Shown in pieces: positions 3 through 39,884 of a DNA stretch of 58,928 nucleotides. The notes under the pieces were generated by a model, which saw only the letters and a list, made by a program, of their open reading frames with translations, was not told where the DNA came from and ran no database searches. How positions within the stretch are numbered: the first letter of the stretch is position 1; every line of letters begins with the position of its first letter. Source of the DNA: Perkinsus chesapeaki ATCC PRA-425 (lineage: Eukaryota > Protista > Perkinsozoa); contig JAAPAO010000168.1 in the NCBI GenBank assembly GCA_013115145.1, forward strand, positions 1-58,928, read 5' to 3'. Made by a program: the position numbers and the translations under genes.

Positions 3-1715
3 AAGTCAGCCGGGGAAGGTGCTATCAGTTGGCAGTTCTATAACGCTCTCACAAATCGGAACCCACTATTCCAGAAAACGGTTGCATTTGAGACCGAGTT
101 CTACTCTAAGGATAATGGATCTCTATGGGAGCTTGCTGAGGCACCTTCCACGGAAGGTTTTGATGCCTCCACGCTGGACGCTATCCTTGAGCGCTCGAAT
201 GAAAATCTAATGAGCGCTGACCTACTTGGGACGAGTACCTCCGCCACGTTCGAGAATCACACAGCTTGGAAGAATGGCACAGGCTACCAATATGTCCTTC
301 TGGATGACACCGTGATCGTTTTTGTTCCAAGTTTCGTCCCGGCTGAAACCTTCTCCCTTCCAGCTGTTCTGTATGAGAACTTTTCTGAAGTTCAGGACTT
401 CGCTCGAGAGAATAACGTTACGAGGCTTCTCTTTGATGTGTCTTCTAATGGTGGAGGACACGCTCTTTCGACCTTTGCTCTGCAATGGTATGTTATATCG
501 AATACCGATGATATTTGCCCTCCAATGGTCCGTCATATGACAGATAACTGGCAATCATGGGTGGAATCATTTGGTATTAACTTCAACAATACGATTGATA
601 CGTTTTTTGAAAATAATCCCCGTCTTGTCGAAGACCCTGGTTTCATTCATGAAAGGTTCCAGCAACTCTATCTTCTTATGAACTATGCTGACCAACTGCT
701 TCTGACTAATCTATCGGATCCGGAAGCGTATCATATTGAAACCAATGAAGTAGCTCGTTTGAAACTCATTGAGAAGTCTATACTGGACGAAGGGAATGCC
801 GCTTTACGGGCATCAGCATTCAAATCTTTCCTGACAGAGAGGCGTTTTCTTAACACTTCGACTGACTTCGGAGGCGAGATTGCTCCACCTCACGGTTGGT
901 ACTTGTTCGATAATACCGAGTTGGTGGACCGCAAAACCAGAAGTCCTTTCTCCCCTCCTCTCAGTCAGTTCACAAATTGTCGGTCTCGTCCGTGGGGCAA
1001 AGAATCTAATTACTCCGCTGAAGGTACGTGGGGTTTCTGTTATCGCTACTTGAATGATGAAATGCCAAAGATGGTGGACCCAAACTATGAAAAAGATTAC
1101 TGGACCGAAGTTGCCTTTGTTACGAATGGGAACTGTGGATCGGCGTGTTCTCTTTTTACTGAGACGCTTCAACTAACTGGTAGGGCAACTGCTTTTACAT
1201 TTGGTGCTCTTGCTGATCAACCGATGGATGTGGCATCTTTTGGAGGTGGTAATGTATACGAATATGATAACATATCACCTTACTTGAATATTGCTAGTTA
1301 TTGGGGGTATTGGGCTACTTTTGGTGAATCTAATTGGTCCAAAAAGCATGCTCATTCTTGGGTTAATAAACCTATACCTTTCCCTGCCAATGTCCGAGCA
1401 AGATTCACGTGGAATATCGGTCTTTCGGATCGTTTGGGACCAAATGCTCTGCCACGCCAGTTCTATAGTATACCTCCTCATAAACATTTGAATATGTGGG
1501 CTAGAAGTCTAGAAGAAAGAGCTCCTATCCATAAGGAGATTGTGAGCTATAAGAATTGGAGTCAGCTACGCGCCAAGCCCCAGTTCCCAGATCTTGGCTA
1601 TTGTCCTGCTTATAATGAACAGGAGAGTGGAAAGTCGTCACTGGCGATACAGGACGTGCCGTCGCTTATATTAACGATCTCTATAGCTACTCTTCTTGTG
1701 TATCGCTCATCTTGA
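3..1715 (+). CDS. Peptidase S41 (CPAF-like) protease, 5'-truncated, probable GPI-anchor tail
   Basis: The frame is open from nt 3 (KSAGEGAISWQFYNAL), upstream of the ORF-track ATG at 210, and matches DGLSWRPYNAL in the paralogue at 34079. Motifs are DVSSNGGG and GNCGSACS. The C-terminus is hydrophobic (SLILTISIATLLVY). No introns in the visible part. Confidence 0.8.
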   Translation, partial: KSAGEGAISWQFYNALTNRNPLFQKTVAFETEFYSKDNGSLWELAEAPSTEGFDASTLDAILERSNENLMSADLLGTSTSATFENHTAWKNGTGYQYVLLDDTVIVFVPSFVPAETFSLPAVLYENFSEVQDFARENNVTRLLFDVSSNGGGHALSTFALQWYVISNTDDICPPMVRHMTDNWQSWVESFGINFNNTIDTFFENNPRLVEDPGFIHERFQQLYLLMNYADQLLLTNLSDPEAYHIETNEVARLKLIEKSILDEGNAALRASAFKSFLTERRFLNTSTDFGGEIAPPHGWYLFDNTELVDRKTRSPFSPPLSQFTNCRSRPWGKESNYSAEGTWGFCYRYLNDEMPKMVDPNYEKDYWTEVAFVTNGNCGSACSLFTETLQLTGRATAFTFGALADQPMDVASFGGGNVYEYDNISPYLNIASYWGYWATFGESNWSKKHAHSWVNKPIPFPANVRARFTWNIGLSDRLGPNALPRQFYSIPPHKHLNMWARSLEERAPIHKEIVSYKNWSQLRAKPQFPDLGYCPAYNEQESGKSSLAIQDVPSLILTISIATLLVYRSS

Positions 1716-19272: not shown

Positions 19273-22200
19273 TCATCCTCCATCCTCTTCGGCAGATTTT
19301 AAAGTTTCCTTCATCACTTTTGCCCGCTTGTAGACAATGGCTGCTTCATGAGTTCGGTTCTGCTGTTTTAACTGAAGTAATATATTTTCATGGCGCAGTG
19401 AAAAGTATTATTCCTCCTTACATTTATAGCTAGTTTTATATCACTATCAATACTAGCTTTCATCGTCTCAACATACTCCTCAAATGACATGTCTCCCGAT
19501 TGAATCTGTCATGTTTAGATTGGCAATGGTATTAAGACGGTTTACTGTAACTGACCTTAGCAATCAATTCATTCATTCTACACTCAAGAGGCGTTCTTTC
19601 TGATTCCTCTGTAACCACTCGTAACCGATCCTCGATTGCCTCAACCGAAACCCATAGAGATGGGTCCAAGGGAGACACATTGGGGTCAACGACACAATTA
19701 TCTGAAAAAAGACTTGCAACACCCAACAATATAAACGTCACGCGCCACAAAACTCACCCTCTTCCTTGACTTGCTCCAAATCATGATCATTATCATCATC
19801 CTTCTCATTAGCAAAAGTGTTGTTGATGGTGGGAGGGAGAGGTGTTGGTAGAACACAATAGGATGCGGTAGCTCGAGTAAGCCAAGCTGAACGATGTGAT
19901 GGGGCTCTAAGTTCACATCTTATCTACACATCAAATAATAATGTTTATATAACAACAATTATTAATACTAAAACAAATGGGGATTCACTTGAAGAGGTTG
20001 ATGATACATGACGTTTTGGTCGCTTCTCTGATGATGACGATGATGATGAATTATCATTATGTATACGAGCCAATGTTAACCTATATAACAGCTAACCTCA
20101 ATCCAACCTAAAGATACTTACTCTCCTTCCGTACTAGTTCCTGTTTGAAGGGCATCCAATTTCAAGCCTCCTGGAGTGGCGGCGATTTCCTTCAAGGAAC
20201 TCCCGAACAGGCTAGCCAGAGCATTCCGTTGACGATAGAGCTGAACAAAAAAAGAATCTTTGGTTGAAGATGTAAGATTCAATTGAGGTCAGATGTAACT
20301 CACCTTCTCACCTTGACTGTTATCTTCGCCTTCCCAAATGCTCTCTCAATGCTTGTTTGTCGCATATGCGAAAAATTAACATCATCCTCGAACCCATTAC
20401 CCTGACCATAGTAAACATCAAGTACAAACGTCACGCGCCCCAAAATTACCGTCAATTCCCTCTTAATAAGGTAAGGCTCCGATCCACTAGGTATACCATG
20501 TAATGTAAGCTCGCAGTAAATAGGATAGTCCTCAGACCATTCACGAATGTATCTCATACTACTTGAAGGTATCTATCAACCTACTACTAGTGATATTAGA
20601 TATAGTTAATCAAGCTACATCAAATGATATCTTCATATGGCCCATTTCATCAACTTGATCATTCTCATTCATAACGGTATACCTTACAGCTCGCTTTTCT
20701 AGCTCTAAAAGATACCAAGGCTCCTACCGTATAACCGACATTTAGTTTACCGTTAGGAACGAATTGCCATCGATCATTACGGGACTCTTTCAACCAACTA
20801 ATATCCTTCTCGGCATTCTTACGAAGTGTGTTGTGCATCTGAAAGGAACCTTAGGTTGACCCTTGAAAGATTCAAAGTAAGTCAAGTTGAAATTGAATCT
20901 ACCACAGCTTCATCCTTTAATTTCTTTATTTCCTCTATCTCTTCAGGTTTATTCTTCCCTGTCGCCAATCGCCTCGCTACTTGACCATGAGCTGGTGGAT
21001 CAAGTAACTCTGGGGACTGTGATAACCTGAAAGGGTCCTAACAGTAATACCAACTTTAATATTCATTACTTCAAACAGAATAGTGCATGATCCTTATGCA
21101 TTTGAGCAACCTCTCCAAGTCTTTGCTCCAGTTGGTCTATCAAAGCTCTTCGATCAACCTCTGACTGTCCCATCAACACCTCATCTGTCATTGATGGTGG
21201 TATCTATCAAGAAGACTATCAATCCCGAATAAGACTAAAATCATACCAGATTCTCCTTGATAGCAAGTCTACATTGTTTCGCTCCTCCTTCTAAAATATT
21301 CTTCAATTCAAGTGCTTTATGTAGCATATCCCTACCAAAAGATGCTATTATCATCTAAGTCCTTCTGTGTTGCCCACACTCTAACCTTGCTCTATCACTA
21401 AAGCCCACTCCAGCTAAAGCTGCTGCTGCCCTTTGATACTCCTTCAATCGCCTTAACACTACTCTTCTATAATCCTCATACTTCTCATCATTCTCGGCTG
21501 GCTCCTCCTCCTCTTCCTCCTTTATCTCATCTAATGGTTAAAGTGTTATTACATCCATATAGTAGAATACCCAATCACCTTTGGCAATTGCTATCCGCTT
21601 TTCGACAATAGTTCGATCTTCTGGTGTAAGATACTCCAACATTGCTTCATCTTTATTAATCCTATCCTTCACATCTTCAATATATCTATCAAGCAATGTC
21701 ATACCATAACACCTCAACATGATGATAGGTCACTTCTCTGGTGATAGCCTCCCTGATTGAGCATCGAGTGTGATAGTTCTAACTTGTAGGTTCAATTCTG
21801 AGATCAGAACCATCACTATCATTGACTATCCCCTATATCAAACTACCTTCCTTTTCATCATCTGTTAGTTTAATCGGTCCATCACCACTTAGGTACCATT
21901 CCATAACAGCCAGACTAACGAGTAGCTCTGGCGCGTGAGGATCTGCTGCCTCAACAGCTGCCATACTACCTAATATGAAGAGCTATCCCTCAATAGATGC
22001 CACAGTACTACTATCTTCAAGGTAGTAGTCATCCTCTTTATTCAACCCCAGAGACACCAGAAGCTCGTCACTGGTGGGACCAGAAGTCGACTTAGGTTTA
22101 CTCTGTTAGATAACTCATCTGCTATAACCATTGTCATCATTACCTTAGCAGCCTTAACTATTTTATCAACTTCTCGAGGGTCTTCTTCTTCAGACATGGC

Positions 22201-22578
22201 TGCCAATTCATTAAGTAATGTTGGATCATTTAAACTATCCATCGATGATGAGCTTGATAATCGTCTACCTATTAACAGCAGCAGCATCACCATACTAACC
22301 AAGATTCCCCCAATAGGTGGATTGTCGAACATGTCGAACCACCGTGGGCTCCAGAATGTACAATATTGACCACGAGTAGTGGTGGTATTACCTTTAGGTG
22401 TAGTTGCTTCCTCTATAAGCCTTCGAATATCATCATCTGTATTACCTCGTTTAAACAATGTCTCTATACCGTCCCCCTCACAATCAGCGCCGGTGGCGAT
22501 GGCGGCGAATCCCATATTACGAAGCTCTGCTTCCAAGGATGCCTCATCAAACTTAGGAGCATTTGGTAGATTTGACAT
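19273..22578 (-). CDS. Coiled-coil plus C2-domain protein, CC2D1/Lgd-like, multi-exon
   Basis: DM14-like LIDQLEQRLGEVAQMHK; KNAEKDISWLKE; C2-like IERAFGKAKITVKLY...GLKLDALQ; C-terminal helix HEAAIVYKRAKVMKETL. These resemble recalled CC2D1A segments in the same order. Confidence 0.6.
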
Positions 22579-22675
22579 AATACAAAAGCTAATGGCAAGT
22601 AAGGGAATGAAGGATAACACTGATAATGATGATATATAAGAGGAAAACTCTGATATTGATGTATGGTATAGACTA

Positions 22676-25600
22676 TCACATTTTAACACCTGATGTCAAC
22701 CAGATGCCACGAACGCTGTTGAAGCACTAAGGAAGAAGGCATGAAGTGAATCCTCATTATTGTTATTACCAATATATCATGACCATTATTGATGAACTCC
22801 TTCAACATTGTTAAAGTTATGATACCCTCAATCGCCTGACCAGTGTCTAATAACATTTGACGATAACAGCCAGGGAGAAGCCCACACTGTTTCGAAGGCG
22901 TCAATATTATACCATTATCCAGCCTAACTCCAATATTAGCTATAGATGTCTCAGTTACTTCACCACGTTCATTAAATAATAATTTATCAATCTCTAAGGG
23001 ATAGATACTTCTATCAGTTGTCTTATGATATAGCCTAATATCAGTATGATCAACAGCTATTGAAGATAGCTGTAAAAGTTGATGGTTCATTGTATCATCA
23101 GGGCGGCAGCAGCAGTCCTCAGACTTCCAGCTCTCTACTGTAAGACTGGAACTTATTTCAATTCGTATCCGCTTTGGGTAATTAGATACCAACAACGTGG
23201 CTATACGATTGCTCACTTCCATTCGAAAGACACTCTCAGCTTTATTTATGTCAACTCCCCATAGACCAGCAGCACTACTAGCAAACCTTTGAGCATGCTC
23301 ATTAAAAAGGTATATAGTACCATCGCTCTCCAACAACATTGTTTCAAATAGCCTTAAATTACTACAATTAGATATTTTAGGATATAAGATGGCATTAACA
23401 CCAACATCTGTATTCAGTAAGATTGGTTTACCAGTGATAGACCAAAGCTGAGGTCGAGCCTTAACTAATATCTCATCCCATTCCTCACTGGGATTCGAAC
23501 CTGCGACTATCGCACCACCACAGCCAGTAGTAACCGTTCGACCATCATCACTGAAGACCAAAGTTCTGATAATAACTGCAAAATGTGTTGAGCCATTAAG
23601 AGGTGATATATAACCAATAGCACCGGAGTAGATGCCTCTAGGCCCACTTTCAATACTGTTCAATATATCACATGATCTCTGCTTTGGGGCACCTGTCATG
23701 CTACCAGCTGGGAATAAAGCATCAAGGGCTTCGACCGGTGAAGCATATTCACCAATTGCAAGATACCCACATACAGTTGAAACTAGCTGATGATAATTCT
23801 TGTAACTTTCAATTTTCATAAGCTTGGGACAGCGTACACTTCCTGTCTCACAAACTGTATTGAGATCATTTCGGACCAAATCGACTATCATCAGATTCTC
23901 AGCGAAATCCTTCGGACTTGTTCGTAACTCTTCTATTAACTTATCATCCTCCATCTTATCTCGCCCCCTTGGCCTAGTCCCTTTAATTGGCTTCATTTCT
24001 ACCCTACCATCCATTACTTTACAGAATCTTTCAGGTGACCCAGATGCTATATAACCAACTTTAGGGAGATACATGAACGCTGAGTAATTGGTAGGGTTGT
24101 GCTCCCTTAATCTTATATATGAACATAAAGGACAGACCTCAGATATACGACCTGTTATCTGAGTAGTAAGACATAGTTCATAACTATCACCAAATGCAAT
24201 ACACTGTTGACATGCTTCAATCTTTGACATGTAACATTGTCGAGAATCTTTTACTCTCATTGCAATTGGGTCTCGAGGTGTGGGACAGAATGCATGATGC
24301 TCATGGATGTGCTCATGGCTGACGGCCTCTACAGCCTTCGCAATGTTATCAAACCACAGACTACTACTCTCAGCATCATCATCATCCTTGGATACTTCCA
24401 TACCAATCACTGAATTCATTACATGATCAATAGCAATAACTCTATCAGTTATAAGATAAATAGTAGATTGCTTGTTGCTATCATAGCCTAAGGTGCCCAT
24501 AATACACGGAGGGATAAGTGGTGGTAACGATGCCGACGACGATGTCATCACCTCTCCACCCACATATATCCTTGACTTTAGATCATCGCACAACTGTCTC
24601 AAATTATCGAATTTATTAGATGAGCCCACTTCAGTCGGTGCCAGACCGCTCCCATGGCCCCAAAGAACATCTAGATTCTCATCCAAGACGCACAGGTTCG
24701 ATCCCTGCTGGCGGCGAGCTTGTCTCCCACCAGCCATAAAAGTGTAACGGCCATCGGTAGAACTCTGACTGGGTTTAGCCGCCGCCGAGTCCAACCAAAC
24801 AACTGGGGGAGTGTCAGATCCTATGTCACCGCAATCATAAAATAAGGCCTTGAAAAATCGCAGATCATCAAAGTTGTCACCAAAAGGGAATGACTTCCAG
24901 GAGAACTTGAAGTTACTGCTGTTGTTGGGGATAGATCTTTGGTAGTTAGGGATTGGGAGGCCAAGAGCTTCCCTCGATGTTCGGCTGATGATATTTGATT
25001 TCCTTGCCTTAGCCATTTGACATATATTATAGCACATTTGCCAACCAAATTCAGAACACACCGATTCTGGATGGAATTGCACTCCAAAAATAGGTAGTCT
25101 TGTATGACGTAAAGCCATCAACACTTTCCGCTCAGATGATGATGGCATATCCTTCCTCATCGTGTAGGAGTTCTCTCGTAGATTCCTCAACCACGACGGA
25201 CTAGTATTATCGATCGCATGATCGATTTTTTCTGTCTCAATAACTACCCCGGTAGTGTCCCAGGTCCACGCCAATGGTAATATCGACTCTGGTAGACTTT
25301 GAGGATCTACTTCTAATGAATGATAGCGTATAGCTGAGAAATGTGTTGGTATATCATAAAAAATTCCCCTACTCCCATGATCATTATCATCATTGCGTGA
25401 TGATGATTGTTGTATAACCATAGCCAGATAACCATGTCTTGATGGATTGGATAATATAATACGACCACCAAAGGATGCTGCTATAGCTTGATGGCCAAGA
25501 CATACACCAAAGAGGATTGGTAGACCAACAGTATTATCATCTTCTTGTTGAGGACTGCTAGTATAAGAAGATAGTATAAAAGATGTTAAAGATCCCAAAT

Positions 25601-25829
25601 CATCTCGGTTCTCAGGGTTACCAGGACCAGGCGATAGGATGATAATACTGTAATCCGAAAGGTTTATATGATGATGATCTTTATCATCACATTTAATTTC
25701 ATCCACATTATCTACACCTAAGATACCTTGAAAAATATCTTTAAGATTATGTGTATATGAATCGTAATGATCAACCAAGAGGCATCGGATAGAAGACTGC
25801 TGCTGTTGATGTTGGAGGCCTATGGTCAT
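22676..25829 (-). CDS. pabABC: Trifunctional pABA synthesis protein: GATase (PabA) + ADC synthase (PabB) + ADC lyase (PabC)
   Basis: GVCLGHQ and HPES (GATase); PIKGT, ENLMIVDLVRNDL and SMTGAPK (PabB); LFETM, HKTT, NERGEVTETSIAN and CGLLPG (PabC). A 43-nt intron at 22727-22769 restores the C-terminal CFNSVRG. Confidence 0.92.
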
Positions 25830-34078: not shown

Positions 34079-36877
34079 ATGAACCTTTATAATGTCATTA
34101 TTATTACCATCCTATCATTTATATTTAATGGATGTGGAAATGATAAAACAGGATTATTAAACAGTGATAGGCCGTGGAATTTACCATTAATAGAACGTTT
34201 AGTTAGAGAATTACGAAAGTTATTCGGTTCAGAGGTTGAATTTGAAAGTGCTTCTGGTGCGGACCTAATTCATGATTATTGTGCTGATTTAAAAGAAACA
34301 TCTATAGTGGCTGGTAAAGATCATACAGGGTTAGCTGATATAAGATGGGCAAAAGGGGAGGATGTCATTAAATGTTTAAATTTATTAAACATTACTCGAC
34401 AAGATGCCTTATTTACGTTACATAACCTACGTTATGGTGTGGCAGAGGATTACTCATTCACAGCTATAGCAAAGGATTCTAAAAAGTCACAAGAGTCAAA
34501 TCATTGTGGATTTGGTATATATGATGTTAAGGTTGACCTTGTTGGATACCTTGATAATAAGATACGTCAGATAACAGATGGAATTAAACAAGCTAACTCG
34601 GATCATCATCGACAAGACATTCTTGATAGTAAAATACCAGCACTACAATTCCATAGTGAATTAATGGATGAATTCAATAAGCTTAATGATGCTCATACGC
34701 TTTATATTAGCCCATTTGATATGTTTACATGGTCTTTACCTATATGTTTTGATAGTGGTAAAATAGGTAATAAACAAGTAGTATGGTTATGTAACTTACA
34801 TATGGAAGTAGTATATACACAATTACATGGTCATGGTACAACAGAGGGAAGCTCTGGTGATGAGATTAGTGAAATTGATGGTATGCCTGTCATTCAATGG
34901 CTTAAATATATGGTATCAGATTCAGGACCATTAAAAGGCTTTTATTCAGATAAGAATCAAAGGATTAATCAAGCATTCTTTATAAGTGATTCTATACAGC
35001 TATCATTGGCATATCGAAGCCCTCCAAAAAAGCATTATATAGATATAACGTTCAAGAATGGTAATAAAGCAAAGGTTAACTGGTTGGTTAGATTTCTTGA
35101 TTATTCACCTAGTCTTGAGAAATACGGTATTAAAGATGGCCTATCATGGCGACCATATAATGCATTAGTCAATCTTAATGAGAAATTCGATTATGTCCTT
35201 GAGATCGAGCATGGTCTCTTACATCGTGACATGGCTAGTATATGGGATGTCACTTCTAGTAGTGGTGATAAAGAAATGGATAAAGCTGTTAGTCCAATAA
35301 TAAAAAGCCTAAATGAAATGCGACAGGAAGATCTATTAGAGCTTGAGGTTGCTGGATTCCTCGGCAAAAATAGGCATCTCAATGATACATACTTTACCCG
35401 AAAGAATACTAATAATAGGTCGGAGGCAGCAGCAGCAGCACTTACAAGGCTTAGTTCAACATATAGGGCATTATGGAATTATAATGGGGTAATACGATGG
35501 AAGATAGAAGGGTATACGGTTATTGTTATTATACCAACATTTTTAATACCAAATCAAGGTGATAAGAGCTCAGATGAGTTCCTTTATCTTCCTGTATTAT
35601 TTGAAATACAACAAGCTGCCAAGTTACGGAATATTACACGTATATTAATAGATTTATCTGCTAACTCTGGAGGATATGTCCTATCATCAATGGCAGCTTT
35701 ATGGCATTTTGTAGATTCACCAGAGGATGTCTGTCAACCACAGTCAAAGCATATGACTAAGCATTGGAGACTGTGGGTAGAATCATTCGCATCTGATTGG
35801 GAAGGTTCGGTAAAGGCTGCCATCAATTGGGCTGGTGATAGACTCGGCGATATGAGTTTTATAACACAGAAATTTGAAGAGTTGAAAATACTTTATAAAT
35901 ATGCAGTTCATATCATACCAGATTTCCGCGACTTTTCAAGTGAACTTAAATGGATTGAGAAGACATTAGTATCATTAGCCTCACTGTCATGGGAAGAGAG
36001 AAAGGAGGCATTCAAAAGGATACTAATTGATAGGGAATTTATACATGGTAAACATGCTAAAGAGATAGCACCAGAAGGGGGAGGATGGTATCCATTTACA
36101 CAGGATGAGTTATTGGTATCAGGTCATAATGTGACATTTAAACCAAGTCTAAAACAATACACTAATCCTGATACCTTTAAATGGGGGCCACAGTACTCTT
36201 ATTATTCAGAAAAGGGAGATTGGACATTCTGTAGGAAGGAAGTATTACCACGTATGGATAAGCTGAAGCTGAATAATAAGGAATGGCAACGAGGTTATTG
36301 GAGAGATATTGCCATATTAAGTGATGGTGGTTGTGGATCTGCATGCTCTATGTTTGCTATGGGACTTCATATGTATGGTAAAGCTACATCGTATACCTTT
36401 GGTGGTATAGCCGATGAACCTATGAGTGTATCAGCATTCACTGGGGGTAATGTTGAGAGTTATGCTAAAGTCTGGCCAAAGGTTAATTTCGCGGCGCATT
36501 TGGGGAATTGGGCAACATTTGGCAAGGCGAAATGGTCAGAGTTGAACGATCTAGATTGGGTTAATTATGCTACTGCATTTCCAACAAGAGCTACAGCAAC
36601 ATTTAATTGGAATATGGCATTCCATAGAGGCCTTGGTGATAAGGCATTACCTATACAATGGTATAGAGTACCAAGTCATAGACATATAGATAGATGGGCT
36701 AGAGGTGTTACAGAAAGGCAAGATATACATGATGATATTGCAATAAGAGATTGGAAGAGTGATCTTAATAATCCACAATATCCCTTATTAGGTTATTGTG
36801 TACCATCACATACTAAAGGACTATACAAGCATTTCTGGCCAAGCACAAAACAACAAAGGTCAATAAGAAGTCATTAA
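34079..36877 (+). CDS. Secreted peptidase S41 (CPAF-like), intronless, 932 aa
   Basis: Signal ending FNGC, LNDAHT (His), DLSANSGG and GGCGSACS (Ser). Confidence 0.85.
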   Translation: MNLYNVIIITILSFIFNGCGNDKTGLLNSDRPWNLPLIERLVRELRKLFGSEVEFESASGADLIHDYCADLKETSIVAGKDHTGLADIRWAKGEDVIKCLNLLNITRQDALFTLHNLRYGVAEDYSFTAIAKDSKKSQESNHCGFGIYDVKVDLVGYLDNKIRQITDGIKQANSDHHRQDILDSKIPALQFHSELMDEFNKLNDAHTLYISPFDMFTWSLPICFDSGKIGNKQVVWLCNLHMEVVYTQLHGHGTTEGSSGDEISEIDGMPVIQWLKYMVSDSGPLKGFYSDKNQRINQAFFISDSIQLSLAYRSPPKKHYIDITFKNGNKAKVNWLVRFLDYSPSLEKYGIKDGLSWRPYNALVNLNEKFDYVLEIEHGLLHRDMASIWDVTSSSGDKEMDKAVSPIIKSLNEMRQEDLLELEVAGFLGKNRHLNDTYFTRKNTNNRSEAAAAALTRLSSTYRALWNYNGVIRWKIEGYTVIVIIPTFLIPNQGDKSSDEFLYLPVLFEIQQAAKLRNITRILIDLSANSGGYVLSSMAALWHFVDSPEDVCQPQSKHMTKHWRLWVESFASDWEGSVKAAINWAGDRLGDMSFITQKFEELKILYKYAVHIIPDFRDFSSELKWIEKTLVSLASLSWEERKEAFKRILIDREFIHGKHAKEIAPEGGGWYPFTQDELLVSGHNVTFKPSLKQYTNPDTFKWGPQYSYYSEKGDWTFCRKEVLPRMDKLKLNNKEWQRGYWRDIAILSDGGCGSACSMFAMGLHMYGKATSYTFGGIADEPMSVSAFTGGNVESYAKVWPKVNFAAHLGNWATFGKAKWSELNDLDWVNYATAFPTRATATFNWNMAFHRGLGDKALPIQWYRVPSHRHIDRWARGVTERQDIHDDIAIRDWKSDLNNPQYPLLGYCVPSHTKGLYKHFWPSTKQQRSIRSH

Positions 36878-37028
36878 TAATGATAGTTATGACTTAGGTG
36901 CAGTTGTTGGCTTTAGCTATTAGTTAGTGTATTATAATGTTAATAATAGTACATGTGGTATGTTATTTATATTGTTATGTTGTGTTCGCATCCATTATGA
37001 CTATTTAAGGCCCCTCCCTTTTTTAACA

Positions 37029-39884
37029 ATGAATCATCCGATCCTACTATCCCTTACCCTCTTTGCCATAAGTGTATTATTCACAGGTTGTGGTCATTCA
37101 AAGTACTCTAATAAAGATGGTGATGAAACAGGAATAGATAATAGAATAAGTGCATCATCGACTGGTAGACTGTATTTAGAAGATGCTATTGACTATTGTG
37201 CGGCCCTTGCTAATATATCAAACGAGTATGATATACCAGGGAGTGAGTATACGGAGAGATGGTCTTCTGGGAGGAATCTTATGCGGTGTGTATCACAGCT
37301 TAAGATAAGTAGGTATGATGCTTTATTTACTTTACATAATCTTCGTTATGGTGTTGCTGAGGCCTATGCTTTTACTGATATTGCTAAGAATGCTCGACAA
37401 TCGGTTCAGGACAATAATTGTGGGTTTGAGATTTATGATATAAAGGTAGACTTAATAGACATTTTTGATAGAAAAATCGAAGAAATGGAGAGAATCACCA
37501 GAGGAATGACGGAACGAAGGAAAATTGATTACCTTAAAGGTGGTATATCTGCATTGGAATTTCATAGCTCTGTGATGGATACTTTAAATAGTCTTTATGA
37601 TGCTCATACTTATTATAAAAGCCCATTAGATATGTTCACATTTGTTATACCTATAGGATTTGAAGCAGTTTGTGGTGTTGATATTGATATAGATGAACAA
37701 TGTCCTCAAGGACAACAGAAAATACATCTTCGTGAGGTTGGACTTGATGTTGAATATCGTCATATCTTTTCAAAGTGGCCTACAGTATATCATTATGACC
37801 ACCTCACACCAGTATCTACTATTAATGGTGAGGATGTATTAGACTGGATGGGCTCTATGGTATCAGGTGTTTTAAAAGGTGTGCATCTAGGTCTAAATCA
37901 ACGTATTAATGATTGGTTCCTAGTAAGAGATGGTCCTATATATGTACCATTAGCATGGTATTCTGTTAATAATGCAGATTTAAGGCCATTAAGAATAGTT
38001 TATGAAGATGGTACCTCGGATACAGTCGAATGGTTGGCAAAGTTGACAGATTACAGTAAAGGGTTAAAGGCAAGAGGAGTTAATGACGGGCTAAGTTGGA
38101 GAGTATACAATTCTCTTATTAATCGTAATGAACAGTTCGATTATGTTATTAATATGGAACAGAATAGGTTTGGTAAAAGATTGGATACTCTACTTCTTAA
38201 AGCATCATCATCATCACCAGCAGCAGGTAGTAGTGGTGATATTACTCTTGATAAGGCTATTAATGAGGTATTAAGTAATGCTAATACCAGAAGGCGTAGA
38301 TTGGTGCCTACAGGCCTAAGGGTTAATAGTATGTCTTTTACTAGACAGATTAAATCAGCATTAGTTGATAAGAAGCTTAGACGACCTAATAATGCTACAT
38401 CCAGTGATCATCATTATACCCCAGCATCATCATATAGGGTACACGGTAACTCATTTAACCTAAAAGGAGGACCATCGGTAGTAAGTCCAATTGTATGGAA
38501 TGATGCATTAGGAGGTACATTGAAATGGAGGGCTCATGACAATGCTATGGTGGTAGTCTTGTCAAGCTTCTCTATTGATGATCGTTGGTCATCTAATGAT
38601 GGTGATTTACTACCACACTTTATGCAAATTCAACGTGAAGCTCGTAAGGCCGGAATAAGTAGGATATTATTGGATTTATCCGGTAATACCGGAGGCTCCC
38701 TTTCTACAGCATTTGCAATGTTATGGTATCTTTTAAAACCATCAGAAATATGTCAACCTCAATCAAAGCATATTACTAAGCATTGGAATCTATGGATCAA
38801 ATCATTTGCTCTAGATTGGTCAAAATCACTTGATGCTGGCGCTGATGAGGTATGGTATAAGTTAGAAGATGTAGATTTTATACGAAGTAAATTTGAGGAG
38901 TTACGAGCCATCATACGATATGCATCGGCAATAGACAGTGAATTGGTTGATGTTAATGCAGCATTGAAGAGTATTGATGGACTAGAAGGATGGGTGGTTG
39001 GTATGACAAATGGTAGGGATAGGCGATGGTCATTCTTACAAATGTTAAATAATAAATTATTTATGACAGAAATACTTAGAGGAGAAATAACTAAATCAGA
39101 GAGTGGATGGTTTCCATTTGGTAATATGGAGTTAGTGGATCCTGTTACTGGTGAACGATTCAATCCACCATTAAAGCAGTTTATGGATCCTGAAACACAT
39201 AAATGGGGGGACATGTTGTTACCATCTAATTATTCTAAAAGAGCTCCATGGGGGTTCTGTGAGGACCTTATCCATCACCAAATGCCTCATCTACAGCAAC
39301 GACATGAGTGTAAAGAAGGCATCACATCAGATGCACAACAGAGATATTCTAGAGACTATTGGAAGGAGATAGCAGTTGTAACTGATGGCAGGTGTGGATC
39401 CGCTTGCACCACTGTTGCTGCTACTTTGTACCTCTCACGTCGAGCAACAACTTATACGTTTGGTGGTGATACTCGTAAACCTACGGCATTCGCATCATAT
39501 GCTGGAGGGAATGTTATTAATTATGATTATTTCTGGCCTAGATTCTCGATAGCTTCTCAGTTAGCACATTGGGGTACATTAGGAGGCTCAAAATGGTCTA
39601 AAAAATATGGTGGTAAATGGATACATTATGCAACCATATTCCCTACAACTGCCACTGCATCCTTTACCTTTAATATGGCATTCCATAAAGCTTTAGGGAA
39701 GGAGTCATTACCTGTACAATGGTATAATATGCCAAGCGATTATAATGTTAGACTTTGGGCCCAAAACCTTGAACAAAGGGCAATAATACAGTCATATGTT
39801 ATCAAGCGTGATTGGGGTAATGATATGATTAATCCTAGTAATAGTGGAATGGGCATGTGCCCAGCTGCAGCAGCAGGCAGTTGA
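37029..39884 (+). CDS. Secreted peptidase S41 (CPAF-like), intronless tandem paralogue
   Basis: The likely start is MNHPILL at 37029 (the ORF track uses an upstream GTG). Signal ending FTGC, LYDAHT, DLSGNTGG and GRCGSACT. Confidence 0.85.
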   Translation: MNHPILLSLTLFAISVLFTGCGHSKYSNKDGDETGIDNRISASSTGRLYLEDAIDYCAALANISNEYDIPGSEYTERWSSGRNLMRCVSQLKISRYDALFTLHNLRYGVAEAYAFTDIAKNARQSVQDNNCGFEIYDIKVDLIDIFDRKIEEMERITRGMTERRKIDYLKGGISALEFHSSVMDTLNSLYDAHTYYKSPLDMFTFVIPIGFEAVCGVDIDIDEQCPQGQQKIHLREVGLDVEYRHIFSKWPTVYHYDHLTPVSTINGEDVLDWMGSMVSGVLKGVHLGLNQRINDWFLVRDGPIYVPLAWYSVNNADLRPLRIVYEDGTSDTVEWLAKLTDYSKGLKARGVNDGLSWRVYNSLINRNEQFDYVINMEQNRFGKRLDTLLLKASSSSPAAGSSGDITLDKAINEVLSNANTRRRRLVPTGLRVNSMSFTRQIKSALVDKKLRRPNNATSSDHHYTPASSYRVHGNSFNLKGGPSVVSPIVWNDALGGTLKWRAHDNAMVVVLSSFSIDDRWSSNDGDLLPHFMQIQREARKAGISRILLDLSGNTGGSLSTAFAMLWYLLKPSEICQPQSKHITKHWNLWIKSFALDWSKSLDAGADEVWYKLEDVDFIRSKFEELRAIIRYASAIDSELVDVNAALKSIDGLEGWVVGMTNGRDRRWSFLQMLNNKLFMTEILRGEITKSESGWFPFGNMELVDPVTGERFNPPLKQFMDPETHKWGDMLLPSNYSKRAPWGFCEDLIHHQMPHLQQRHECKEGITSDAQQRYSRDYWKEIAVVTDGRCGSACTTVAATLYLSRRATTYTFGGDTRKPTAFASYAGGNVINYDYFWPRFSIASQLAHWGTLGGSKWSKKYGGKWIHYATIFPTTATASFTFNMAFHKALGKESLPVQWYNMPSDYNVRLWAQNLEQRAIIQSYVIKRDWGNDMINPSNSGMGMCPAAAAGS

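What the first reader, a model, noticed from the sequence alone, without database searches (positions are those of the whole stretch)
22676..25829. PabA-PabB-PabC triple fusion: chorismate to pABA in one polypeptide
Seen: one frame carries the GATase (Cys in GVCLG, HPE), the ADC synthase (PIKGT, the PabB rather than TrpE signature) and a PLP lyase domain (Lys codon 23022-23024 in HKTT). A hidden 43-nt intron (22727-22769) replaces the ORF-track tail with CFNSVRGIWLTSGVKM, the typical fold-IV ending, and shows the gene is nuclear. The other ~3 kb has no obvious intron. Established: eukaryotes usually fuse PabA+B with a separate lyase, while many bacteria fuse PabB+C. I do not recall a characterised three-way fusion. 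Inference: substrate channelling, possibly a bacterial PabBC-derived module, and a self-contained antifolate target.
Basis: partly seen in the sequence, partly recalled or inferred. Interest (0 to 1): 0.8.

Follow-up and report, generated by a model that had tools for sequence, protein, structure and literature searches.

The report
Three-in-one pABA synthase gene, Perkinsus
This parasite gene really does join the three enzymes that turn chorismate into p-aminobenzoate (the folate building block) into one protein, but the same fusion was already tested in a bacterium and sits, under an incomplete name, in the databases for two sister Perkinsus species.

Summary
One minus-strand gene (25829 to 22676) has a 3060-nt first exon, a 43-nt GT..AG intron (22769-22727) and a 51-nt second exon. 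It encodes a 1036-aa protein with three domains: class-I glutamine amidotransferase, ADC synthase (PIKGT lysine) and a fold-type IV PLP domain. All catalytic residues are invariant across 16 homologous triple fusions.

Homology supports the intron. The spliced tail CFNSVRGIW matches P. olseni gene models and intronless metagenome homologues. P. marinus has a 47-nt intron at the same position.

The novelty claim does not hold:
- A PabA-PabB-PabC fusion (Corynebacterium diphtheriae DIP1790) was characterised by complementation and enzyme assay in 2007.
- P. marinus (XP_002780928.1) and P. olseni orthologues with all three domains are already public.
- At least 14 proteins from an uncultured, gene-dense, probably alveolate eukaryote clade share the architecture.

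In the tree, the PabB domain groups with PabA-PabB-type enzymes, not with bacterial PabB-PabC fusions. The "PabBC-derived module" idea is therefore unsupported.

What remains modestly new is that I found no paper describing a eukaryotic trifunctional pABA synthase. It appears to be shared by Perkinsus and a second eukaryote lineage. Verdict: a new member of a known kind, of low to moderate interest.

The parts
22676..25829 (-). Whole gene: exon 1, 43-nt intron, exon 2 with stop codon; spliced product 1036 aa
22770..25829 (-). Exon 1 (3060 nt, residues 1-1020), start ATG at 25829-25827
   Evidence: the N-terminus MTIGLQ aligns with P. olseni MTISAE
22727..22769 (-). 43-nt GT..AG spliceosomal intron; its position is conserved in P. 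marinus (47 nt there)
22676..22726 (-). Exon 2: CFNSVRGIWLTSGVKM plus TGA (22678-22676); this is the last strand of the fold-IV domain
25005..25787 (-). Class-I glutamine amidotransferase (PabA-like) domain, residues about 15-275. Triad Cys110 (25502-25500), His253 (25073-25071), Glu255 (25067-25065). It carries an insert of about 40 residues (about 193-240) with invariant W213 and L217, shared with the metagenome clade
23451..24500 (-). ADC synthase (PabB-like) chorismate-binding region, residues about 444-793; PIKGT with Lys616 (23984-23982)
22679..23387 (-). Short fold-type IV PLP domain (PabC-like, putative ADC lyase), residues about 815-1036, interrupted by the intron. Invariant residues: Arg848, Lys936 (23024-23022), Glu960, Pro986-Gly987, Arg990

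Best explanation
This is a nuclear Perkinsus gene for a trifunctional p-aminobenzoate synthase. Inferred mechanism: the N-terminal class-I amidotransferase hydrolyses glutamine to supply ammonia. The central PabB-type domain uses its PIKGT lysine to convert chorismate to 4-amino-4-deoxychorismate (ADC). The C-terminal short fold-type IV PLP domain eliminates pyruvate from ADC and aromatises it to pABA. Because fold-IV enzymes act as dimers, the protein is probably at least a homodimer held through this domain. Fusing the lyase keeps the labile intermediate ADC next to the enzyme that consumes it. The N-terminus starts directly at the amidotransferase fold, with no presequence, so the enzyme is probably cytosolic. 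What is shown: the domain content, the intact catalytic residues, the intron, and conservation of the fusion in three Perkinsus species and a second eukaryote clade. What is inferred: the three activities, channelling, oligomeric state and location.
For: There are three significant Pfam domains in one ORF. The top NCBIfam hits are PabB families, ahead of TrpE families. The best PDB hit for the first two domains is a 702-aa 4-amino-4-deoxychorismate synthase, 8hx6 (E 3e-99). In an alignment of 16 triple fusions (A1), Cys110, His253, Glu255, Lys616, Arg848, Lys936, Glu960, Gly987 and Arg990 are invariant. The PabC-domain profile matches E. coli PabC with hhalign probability 97.3% (E 2e-11), with the conserved Arg and Glu in register. 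The AlphaFold model of the domain has mean pLDDT 91.7. Its best folds are 3qqm, then the putative ADC lyases 3ceb and 3lul, and further down E. coli, P. aeruginosa and yeast ADC lyases. The fusion is conserved at 57-61% identity in P. marinus (1045 aa) and P. olseni (1003 aa), and at 32-37% identity in 14 metagenome proteins of about 1000 aa. The PabB-to-PabC linker is conserved as protein among the Perkinsus species. In bacteria, the same short PabC family lies fused to PabB or directly beside PabAB. A trifunctional enzyme of this domain composition has been shown to work (PMC1971073).
Against: No activity has been measured for this protein or for any member of its clade. Scores fall below the NCBIfam equivalog cut-offs (TIGR01823 332 versus 442.55; TIGR00553 292 versus 328). 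The short HKT-type fold-IV family has no biochemically characterised member that I could tie to it here. Its best structure, 3qqm, is only a 'putative aminotransferase'. In the profile alignment, the invariant lysine lies two columns away from E. coli Lys140. Transcript structure was not examined.
Confidence: 0.8

Rival explanations
1. The protein is a bifunctional ADC synthase whose C-terminal fold-IV domain is not an ADC lyase. The domain could be a transaminase for another substrate, a regulatory module or only a dimerisation module, with pABA made by a separate lyase elsewhere in the genome.
For: The closest solved structure, 3qqm, is annotated only as a putative aminotransferase. Fold-IV lyases and transaminases are hard to tell apart by sequence (stated in PMC1971073). 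The metagenome clade replaces the Perkinsus HKTxDRxxY motif with KxxDWxVP.
Against: The PLP lysine, the N1-binding Glu and the phosphate-binding Arg and Gly-x-x-Arg residues are invariant. This domain family is found again and again fused to PabB, or directly beside PabAB, in bacteria. The profile match to E. coli PabC has 97% probability.
Confidence: 0.1
2. The ORF is continuous in DNA, but the cell makes separate products. An internal spliced-leader acceptor, or proteolytic processing in the linker, would release the lyase from ADC synthase.
For: None directly. From my own knowledge, Perkinsus uses spliced-leader trans-splicing.
Against: There is no stop codon at the junction in three Perkinsus species or in 14 or more other eukaryotic homologues. 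The linker is conserved as protein sequence.
Confidence: 0.06
3. The gene is bacterial contamination, or a very recent transfer of a bacterial PabBC-containing gene.
For: Apart from the eukaryotic triple fusions, the best full-length hits are bacterial PabAB proteins, mostly actinobacterial. The best PabC-domain hits are bacterial PabBC or stand-alone proteins. The gene is almost intronless.
Against: The gene has a spliceosomal intron conserved in position between Perkinsus species, and orthologues exist in three Perkinsus genomes. The PabB domain falls outside the sampled bacterial PabAB clade (SH-aLRT 90) and far from PabBC-type sequences. None of the best 80 GTDB loci is a bacterial triple fusion.
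Confidence: 0.03

Closest known systems
Corynebacterium diphtheriae DIP1790, trifunctional PabAa-PabAb-PabAc pABA synthase (de Crecy-Lagard et al. 2007, PMC1971073)
   Same: One polypeptide combines amidotransferase, ADC synthase and ADC lyase. It was shown to complement an E. coli pabA pabB mutant and to make pABA from chorismate and glutamine without added PabC. Henry et al. 2016 list the fusion under unstable intermediates.
   Different: It is bacterial. I could not fetch its sequence, so neither its homology to the Perkinsus fusion nor the type of its lyase domain was tested. The one Corynebacterium locus I retrieved (L063) has PabAB only.
Perkinsus marinus XP_002780928.1 ('Para-aminobenzoate synthase, putative', 1045 aa) and P. 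olseni KAF4657867.1 / KAF4656223.1 (1003 / 998 aa)
   Same: These are orthologues at 57-61% identity with the same three Pfam domains. The intron is at the same position in P. marinus, and the spliced tail is the same in P. olseni.
   Different: They come from different species. Their public names mention only the synthase. The P. marinus model reads through the intron and so has a wrong C-terminus.
Eukaryotic bifunctional ADC synthase (PabA-PabB; fungi, plants, apicomplexans; NCBIfam TIGR01823)
   Same: It has an N-terminal amidotransferase fused to PabB. TIGR01823 is the top NCBIfam hit (E 5.9e-99).
   Different: Those enzymes have a separate lyase (PMC6451014). The score here is below the family cut-off (332 versus 442.55). 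No canonical eukaryotic ADCS sequence was available for the trees.
Bacterial PabB-PabC fusions (KEGG-style name 'para-aminobenzoate synthetase / 4-amino-4-deoxychorismate lyase', about 580-620 aa)
   Same: The lyase domain belongs to the same short HKT-type fold-IV family and is also fused C-terminal to PabB.
   Different: Their PabB domains form a different group from that of the triple fusions. They lack the amidotransferase, which is encoded separately, for example in Halobacillus L022.
Classical stand-alone ADC lyases (E. coli PabC 1i2k, P. aeruginosa 2y4r, yeast Abz2 4k6n)
   Same: Same fold-type IV PLP fold with lysine, glutamate and arginine in equivalent places.
   Different: They are 30-130 residues longer. 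Sequence identity in the structural alignments is only 17-20%.

Membership tests
Class-I glutamine amidotransferase (PabA/TrpG type) | Pfam GATase domain with the Cys-His-Glu triad | tested here: met
   PF00117 E 5e-30. Cys110, His253 and Glu255 are invariant in 16 sequences.
ADC synthase component I (PabB) | Chorismate-binding domain | tested here: met
   PF00425 E 1.9e-76. PDB hits to ADC synthases 8hx6, 3h9m, 4grh and 1k0e.
ADC synthase component I (PabB) | PIKGT lysine (TrpE has PIAGT; this distinction is from my own knowledge of the literature) | tested here: met
   MKPIKGTRPRG is present, and Lys616 is invariant.
ADC synthase component I (PabB) | Score above a curated equivalog cut-off | tested here: not met
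   TIGR01823 scores 332 versus 442.55 and TIGR00553 scores 292 versus 328.4. PabB models still outrank TrpE models.
ADC lyase (PabC), fold-type IV PLP enzymes | Fold-type IV domain | tested here: met
   PF01063 E 3.2e-17. The model has pLDDT 91.7. Foldseek top hits are 3qqm, 3ceb and 3lul, with 1i2k, 2y4r and 4k6n also at probability 1.00.
ADC lyase (PabC), fold-type IV PLP enzymes | Schiff-base lysine plus the Glu that binds PLP N1 and the Arg and Gly-x-x-Arg that bind the phosphate | tested here: met
   Lys936, Glu960, Thr977, Pro978, Gly987 and Arg990 are invariant in both alignments. Arg848 is invariant in the 16 triple fusions and at least 90% conserved in the 63 domain sequences. Arg and Glu are in register with E. 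coli PabC, but the Lys is two columns off.
ADC lyase (PabC), fold-type IV PLP enzymes | Lyase rather than transaminase activity on ADC | not testable with these tools
   The only evidence is context: recurrent fusion or adjacency to PabB and PabAB.
Trifunctional PabA-PabB-PabC pABA synthase (DIP1790 type) | All three domains in one reading frame, in the order A-B-C | tested here: met
Trifunctional PabA-PabB-PabC pABA synthase (DIP1790 type) | Common descent with DIP1790 | not tested
   The DIP1790 sequence was not obtainable.
Trifunctional PabA-PabB-PabC pABA synthase (DIP1790 type) | pABA made from chorismate and glutamine without added lyase | not testable with these tools
   This needs an enzyme assay like the one in PMC1971073.

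The most novel reading that the evidence does not exclude
The three-way fusion arose once in an early alveolate (myzozoan) lineage, independently of the Corynebacterium fusion. It arose by adding a short HKT-type lyase to an existing PabA-PabB enzyme. Perkinsus and a diverse, uncultured, gene-dense relative both keep it. That would make it the first eukaryotic single-polypeptide chorismate-to-pABA synthase, and a lineage marker as well as a self-contained antifolate target in shellfish parasites.
Probability: 0.45. Interest if true: 0.45.

Novelty: new member of a known kind. Interest (0 to 1): 0.3.

Why it matters
Perkinsus species are serious parasites of oysters and clams, and animals lack pABA synthesis. 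A single protein carrying the whole chorismate-to-pABA branch is therefore a tidy target and an easy enzyme to express and assay. The finding also corrects the C-terminus of the public P. marinus model. It shows that the fused lyase domain has been overlooked in the names given to the Perkinsus proteins. It adds a second eukaryote lineage with the same architecture, which would let the age of the fusion be dated. It does not change what is known about how pABA is made, and the fusion principle was demonstrated in 2007.

Tried and rejected
- **Bacterial PabBC origin.** I tested it with a PabB-domain tree of 77 sequences and rejected it for that domain. The PabC-domain tree gives no specific bacterial sister.
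- **Bacterial triple fusions in GTDB species genomes.** None of the best 80 loci is one. The apparent full-length matches resolve into PabAB plus an adjacent PabC (Binataceae L008) or PabA plus PabBC (Halobacillus L022). The Corynebacterium locus L063 has a frameshifted PabAB and no lyase.
- **Naming the metagenome eukaryote from neighbouring genes.** No named cluster members were found. A RuvBL1 search and tree place it only loosely among myzozoan alveolates.
- **Literature.** The held library has no paper with Perkinsus plus aminodeoxychorismate, or Perkinsus plus folate plus pABA. I found no paper on a eukaryotic ADCS-ADCL fusion.
- **Canonical eukaryotic ADC synthases and DIP1790.** Neither could be brought into the trees, so vertical descent versus ancient transfer is left open.
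- **Exact register of the PLP lysine against E. coli Lys140.** The profile alignment did not settle it.
- **A second hidden intron.** I considered this and rejected it, because the ORF is collinear with the orthologues. The only extra segment (about 9 residues near residue 155) is too short to be an intron.

Full report
**What is in the sequence.** The minus strand carries an uninterrupted reading frame of 1048 codons, 25829 to 22683. Pfam finds three domains in it:
- GATase, residues 17-192 plus a second stretch, E 5e-30.
- Chorismate_bind, residues 530-790, E 1.9e-76.
- Aminotran_4, residues 827-1012, E 3.2e-17.

In NCBIfam the best hits are PabB families (TIGR01823 'PabB-fungal' E 5.9e-99, TIGR00553 pabB E 6.9e-87), ahead of TrpE families. 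None reaches its equivalog cut-off.

**The intron.** Reading the minus strand...GGT CAT GAT ATA TTG is followed by a 43-nt segment, 22769-22727, that begins GT and ends AG. Removing it changes the frame. The product becomes 1036 aa and ends ...NNGHDIL|CFNSVRGIWLTSGVKM, with the stop codon at 22678-22676. Three lines of evidence support it:
- P. olseni gene models end ...GREIVCFNSVRGIWRAQVQV.
- Most of the 14 intronless metagenome homologues have CFNSVRG, or a close variant such as CFNGVRG or CLNALRG, at this position.
- The P. marinus contig L003 has a 47-nt GT..AG segment at exactly the same codon. Its removal gives CFNSVRGIWRAKIE. The GenBank P. marinus model instead reads through and carries an unrelated tail.

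The intron is therefore real and conserved in position, and the gene is nuclear. The rest of the ORF is collinear with the orthologues, so no second intron is needed.

**Whose genome.** Earlier notes of this scan call the genome a Perkinsus, and my searches agree. The two best full-length hits are P. marinus and P. olseni:
- P. marinus cluster: XP_002780928.1, 'Para-aminobenzoate synthase, putative', 1045 aa.
- P. olseni cluster: KAF4657867.1 and KAF4656223.1, 1003 and 998 aa.

They are 57-61% identical to the window protein, and both carry all three Pfam domains. The window therefore comes from a third, well-diverged Perkinsus-like species. The linker between the synthase and the lyase domain (KARPQLWS.T....LL.T.VGV...L.PK) is conserved as protein among the three. 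This argues against two genes that merely abut.

**Are the domains intact?** I aligned 16 triple fusions (A1). The following residues are invariant:
- Amidotransferase triad: Cys110, His253, Glu255.
- PabB: SPE (residues 598-600), Lys616 in PIKGT, and the GSMTGAPK and GGA motifs.
- Lyase domain: His845, Arg848, Lys936, Thr959-Glu960, Thr977-Pro978, Pro986-Gly987 and Arg990.

A wider alignment of 63 lyase-type domains (A2) keeps only Lys, Glu, Thr-Pro, Gly and Arg invariant. That is the expected PLP-binding set for fold-type IV enzymes. A profile comparison of A2 with E. coli PabC gives 97.3% probability (E 2e-11) over 204 columns. The conserved Arg (HxxR) and Glu (TE) are in register. The lysine is two columns off, so its exact register is not settled.

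AlphaFold with A2 gives a confident model (mean pLDDT 91.7, pTM 0.86). Its best structural matches are 3qqm (a 221-residue Mesorhizobium 'putative aminotransferase'), then the putative ADC lyases 3ceb and 3lul. Further down the list are the ADC lyases of E. coli, P. aeruginosa and yeast, alongside BCAT and D-amino-acid transaminases (sequence-level hits). The domain is thus a complete, short (about 220 residues) fold-IV module of an HKT-type subfamily. Nothing here shows directly that it is a lyase rather than a transaminase. The argument is context.

**Context of the lyase subfamily.** A search of 1.84 billion representatives with the domain alone returns two kinds of protein after Perkinsus. 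One is 570-630 residues long with the match at the C-terminus (PabB-PabC fusions). The other is 200-290 residues long and stand-alone (Pfam content of the fused ones). In GTDB genomes, a Binataceae MAG has PabAB (696 aa) followed 42 nt later by a 237-aa gene of this subfamily. Halobacillus has PabA (200 aa) followed by PabBC (602 aa). The recurrent linkage to ADC synthase is good genomic evidence for ADC lyase function.

**Is the architecture new?** No. De Crecy-Lagard et al. 2007 predicted and tested a triple fusion in Corynebacterium diphtheriae, DIP1790. It complemented an E. coli pabA pabB mutant. Extracts made pABA from chorismate and glutamine at the same rate with or without added PabC, whereas Arabidopsis ADCS needed PabC (PMC1971073). 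Henry et al. 2016 list the same C. diphtheriae gene among fusions that flank an unstable intermediate, 4-amino-4-deoxychorismate (PMC4921024). The Perkinsus orthologues have been public for years, although their names mention only the synthase.

**Other eukaryotes.** The full-length search also returned 14 clusters of about 990-1035-aa proteins with the same three domains, at 32-37% identity over about 95% of the query. All are from metagenomes or Logan assemblies.

One of them (P0073) lies on contigs up to 247 kb long. The 19-kb stretch I fetched is packed with plainly eukaryotic genes called as single ORFs and separated by only 3-70 nt on the + strand: RuvBL1/TIP49, EMC1, a CAP_C/TBCC-domain gene, a SUMO protease, AP-5 zeta, diphthine-ammonia ligase and ProRS. 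The neighbours have no named cluster members.

The best named relatives of the RuvBL1 are:
- Oxyrrhis marina and core dinoflagellates, 79%.
- Voromonas, Amoebophrya and Perkinsus, 75-76%.
- Volvox, 74%.

In a small tree the clade is a separate branch among these alveolates, with its position unresolved. I read it as an uncultured, gene-dense, probably myzozoan alveolate lineage. That assignment is weak.

Three further GC-rich contigs also carry amidotransferase-coding sequence upstream of a PabB-PabC ORF. In L086 and L087 (66% GC, JGI sample 3300017180) the frames differ; in L086 the break lies across a run of N. In L085 (74% GC) the break is an overlap of frames. These are probably more triple fusions of unknown origin.

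**Origin.** In a PabB-domain tree (77 sequences, quick IQ-TREE with a mixture model):
- The three Perkinsus sequences and the 14 metagenome sequences form one clade (SH-aLRT 96).
- This clade lies inside the PabA-PabB-type group. A long, fully supported branch (100, length 1.6) separates that group from 31 of the 32 sampled bacterial PabBC-type domains. The exception, P0026, is one of the probable triple fusions above.
- The clade lies outside the sampled bacterial PabAB clade (90).

In the lyase-domain tree, Perkinsus and the metagenome clade are neighbours, with all bacterial fused and stand-alone sequences on the other side of a branch with support 86. The amidotransferase domain of both groups shares an insert of about 40 residues with invariant Trp213 and Leu217. 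The bacterial PabAB protein I examined lacks it.

Together these results fit one fusion event ancestral to Perkinsus and the metagenome clade, built on a PabA-PabB enzyme rather than on a bacterial PabBC module. I could not include canonical eukaryotic ADC synthases or DIP1790. Vertical descent from the eukaryotic bifunctional enzyme, ancient transfer, and independence from the Corynebacterium fusion therefore all remain untested.

**Verdict.** The functional reading (chorismate to pABA in one polypeptide) is well supported by sequence, fold and context, but it is unassayed. The novelty claim fails, and the proposed PabBC origin is not supported. I found no paper describing a eukaryotic trifunctional pABA synthase. 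That, together with the second eukaryote lineage and the corrected P. marinus C-terminus, is the modest new content.

Noticed in passing
L003:10110-10170 (P. marinus-like Logan contig): The public P. marinus model XP_002780928.1 (P0183) reads through a 47-nt GT..AG intron, so it has a wrong C-terminal tail. Splicing restores CFNSVRGIWRAKIE.
   Followed up: yes
L001:1-19012 and L002: Contigs from an uncultured eukaryote (49% GC) carry apparently intronless genes only 3-70 nt apart on the + strand, in same-strand blocks. The genes include RuvBL1, EMC1, AP-5 zeta, an HslU-like AAA protein and the triple pab fusion. The nearest named RuvBL1 proteins are from Oxyrrhis and dinoflagellates (79%).
   Followed up: partly
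L086:1-3122, L087, L085:1-3548: GC-rich contigs (66% and 74% GC) have amidotransferase-coding sequence upstream of a PabB-PabC ORF in another frame. In L086 the break lies across a run of N. In L085 the two frames overlap. These are probably further triple fusions. The organisms are unknown.
   Followed up: partly
window 25110-25250 (residues about 193-240): The amidotransferase domain has an insert of about 40 residues with invariant Trp213 and Leu217. Perkinsus and the metagenome clade share it, and the bacterial PabAB protein I examined (P0079) lacks it. Its role is unknown.
   Followed up: no
window 34079-39884 (+) and 210-1715 (+): Two adjacent long intronless ORFs (932 and 985 aa) and a third ORF (501 aa) show weak, sub-threshold similarity to Peptidase_S41 and the CPAF-like PDZ domain. 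They lie in a region of low GC (35-38%) with strong positive GC skew.
   Followed up: no
window 22042-22581 (-): The next gene downstream starts about 95 nt after the pab stop codon (MSNLPNAPKFDEASLEAELRNMGF...). It has no Pfam match.
   Followed up: partly
L008:1498-4343 and L022:1495-3827: Bacterial operons carry the same three modules, only partly fused. Binataceae has PabAB (696 aa) plus a short PabC (237 aa) 42 nt downstream. Halobacillus has PabA (200 aa) plus PabBC (602 aa).
   Followed up: yes
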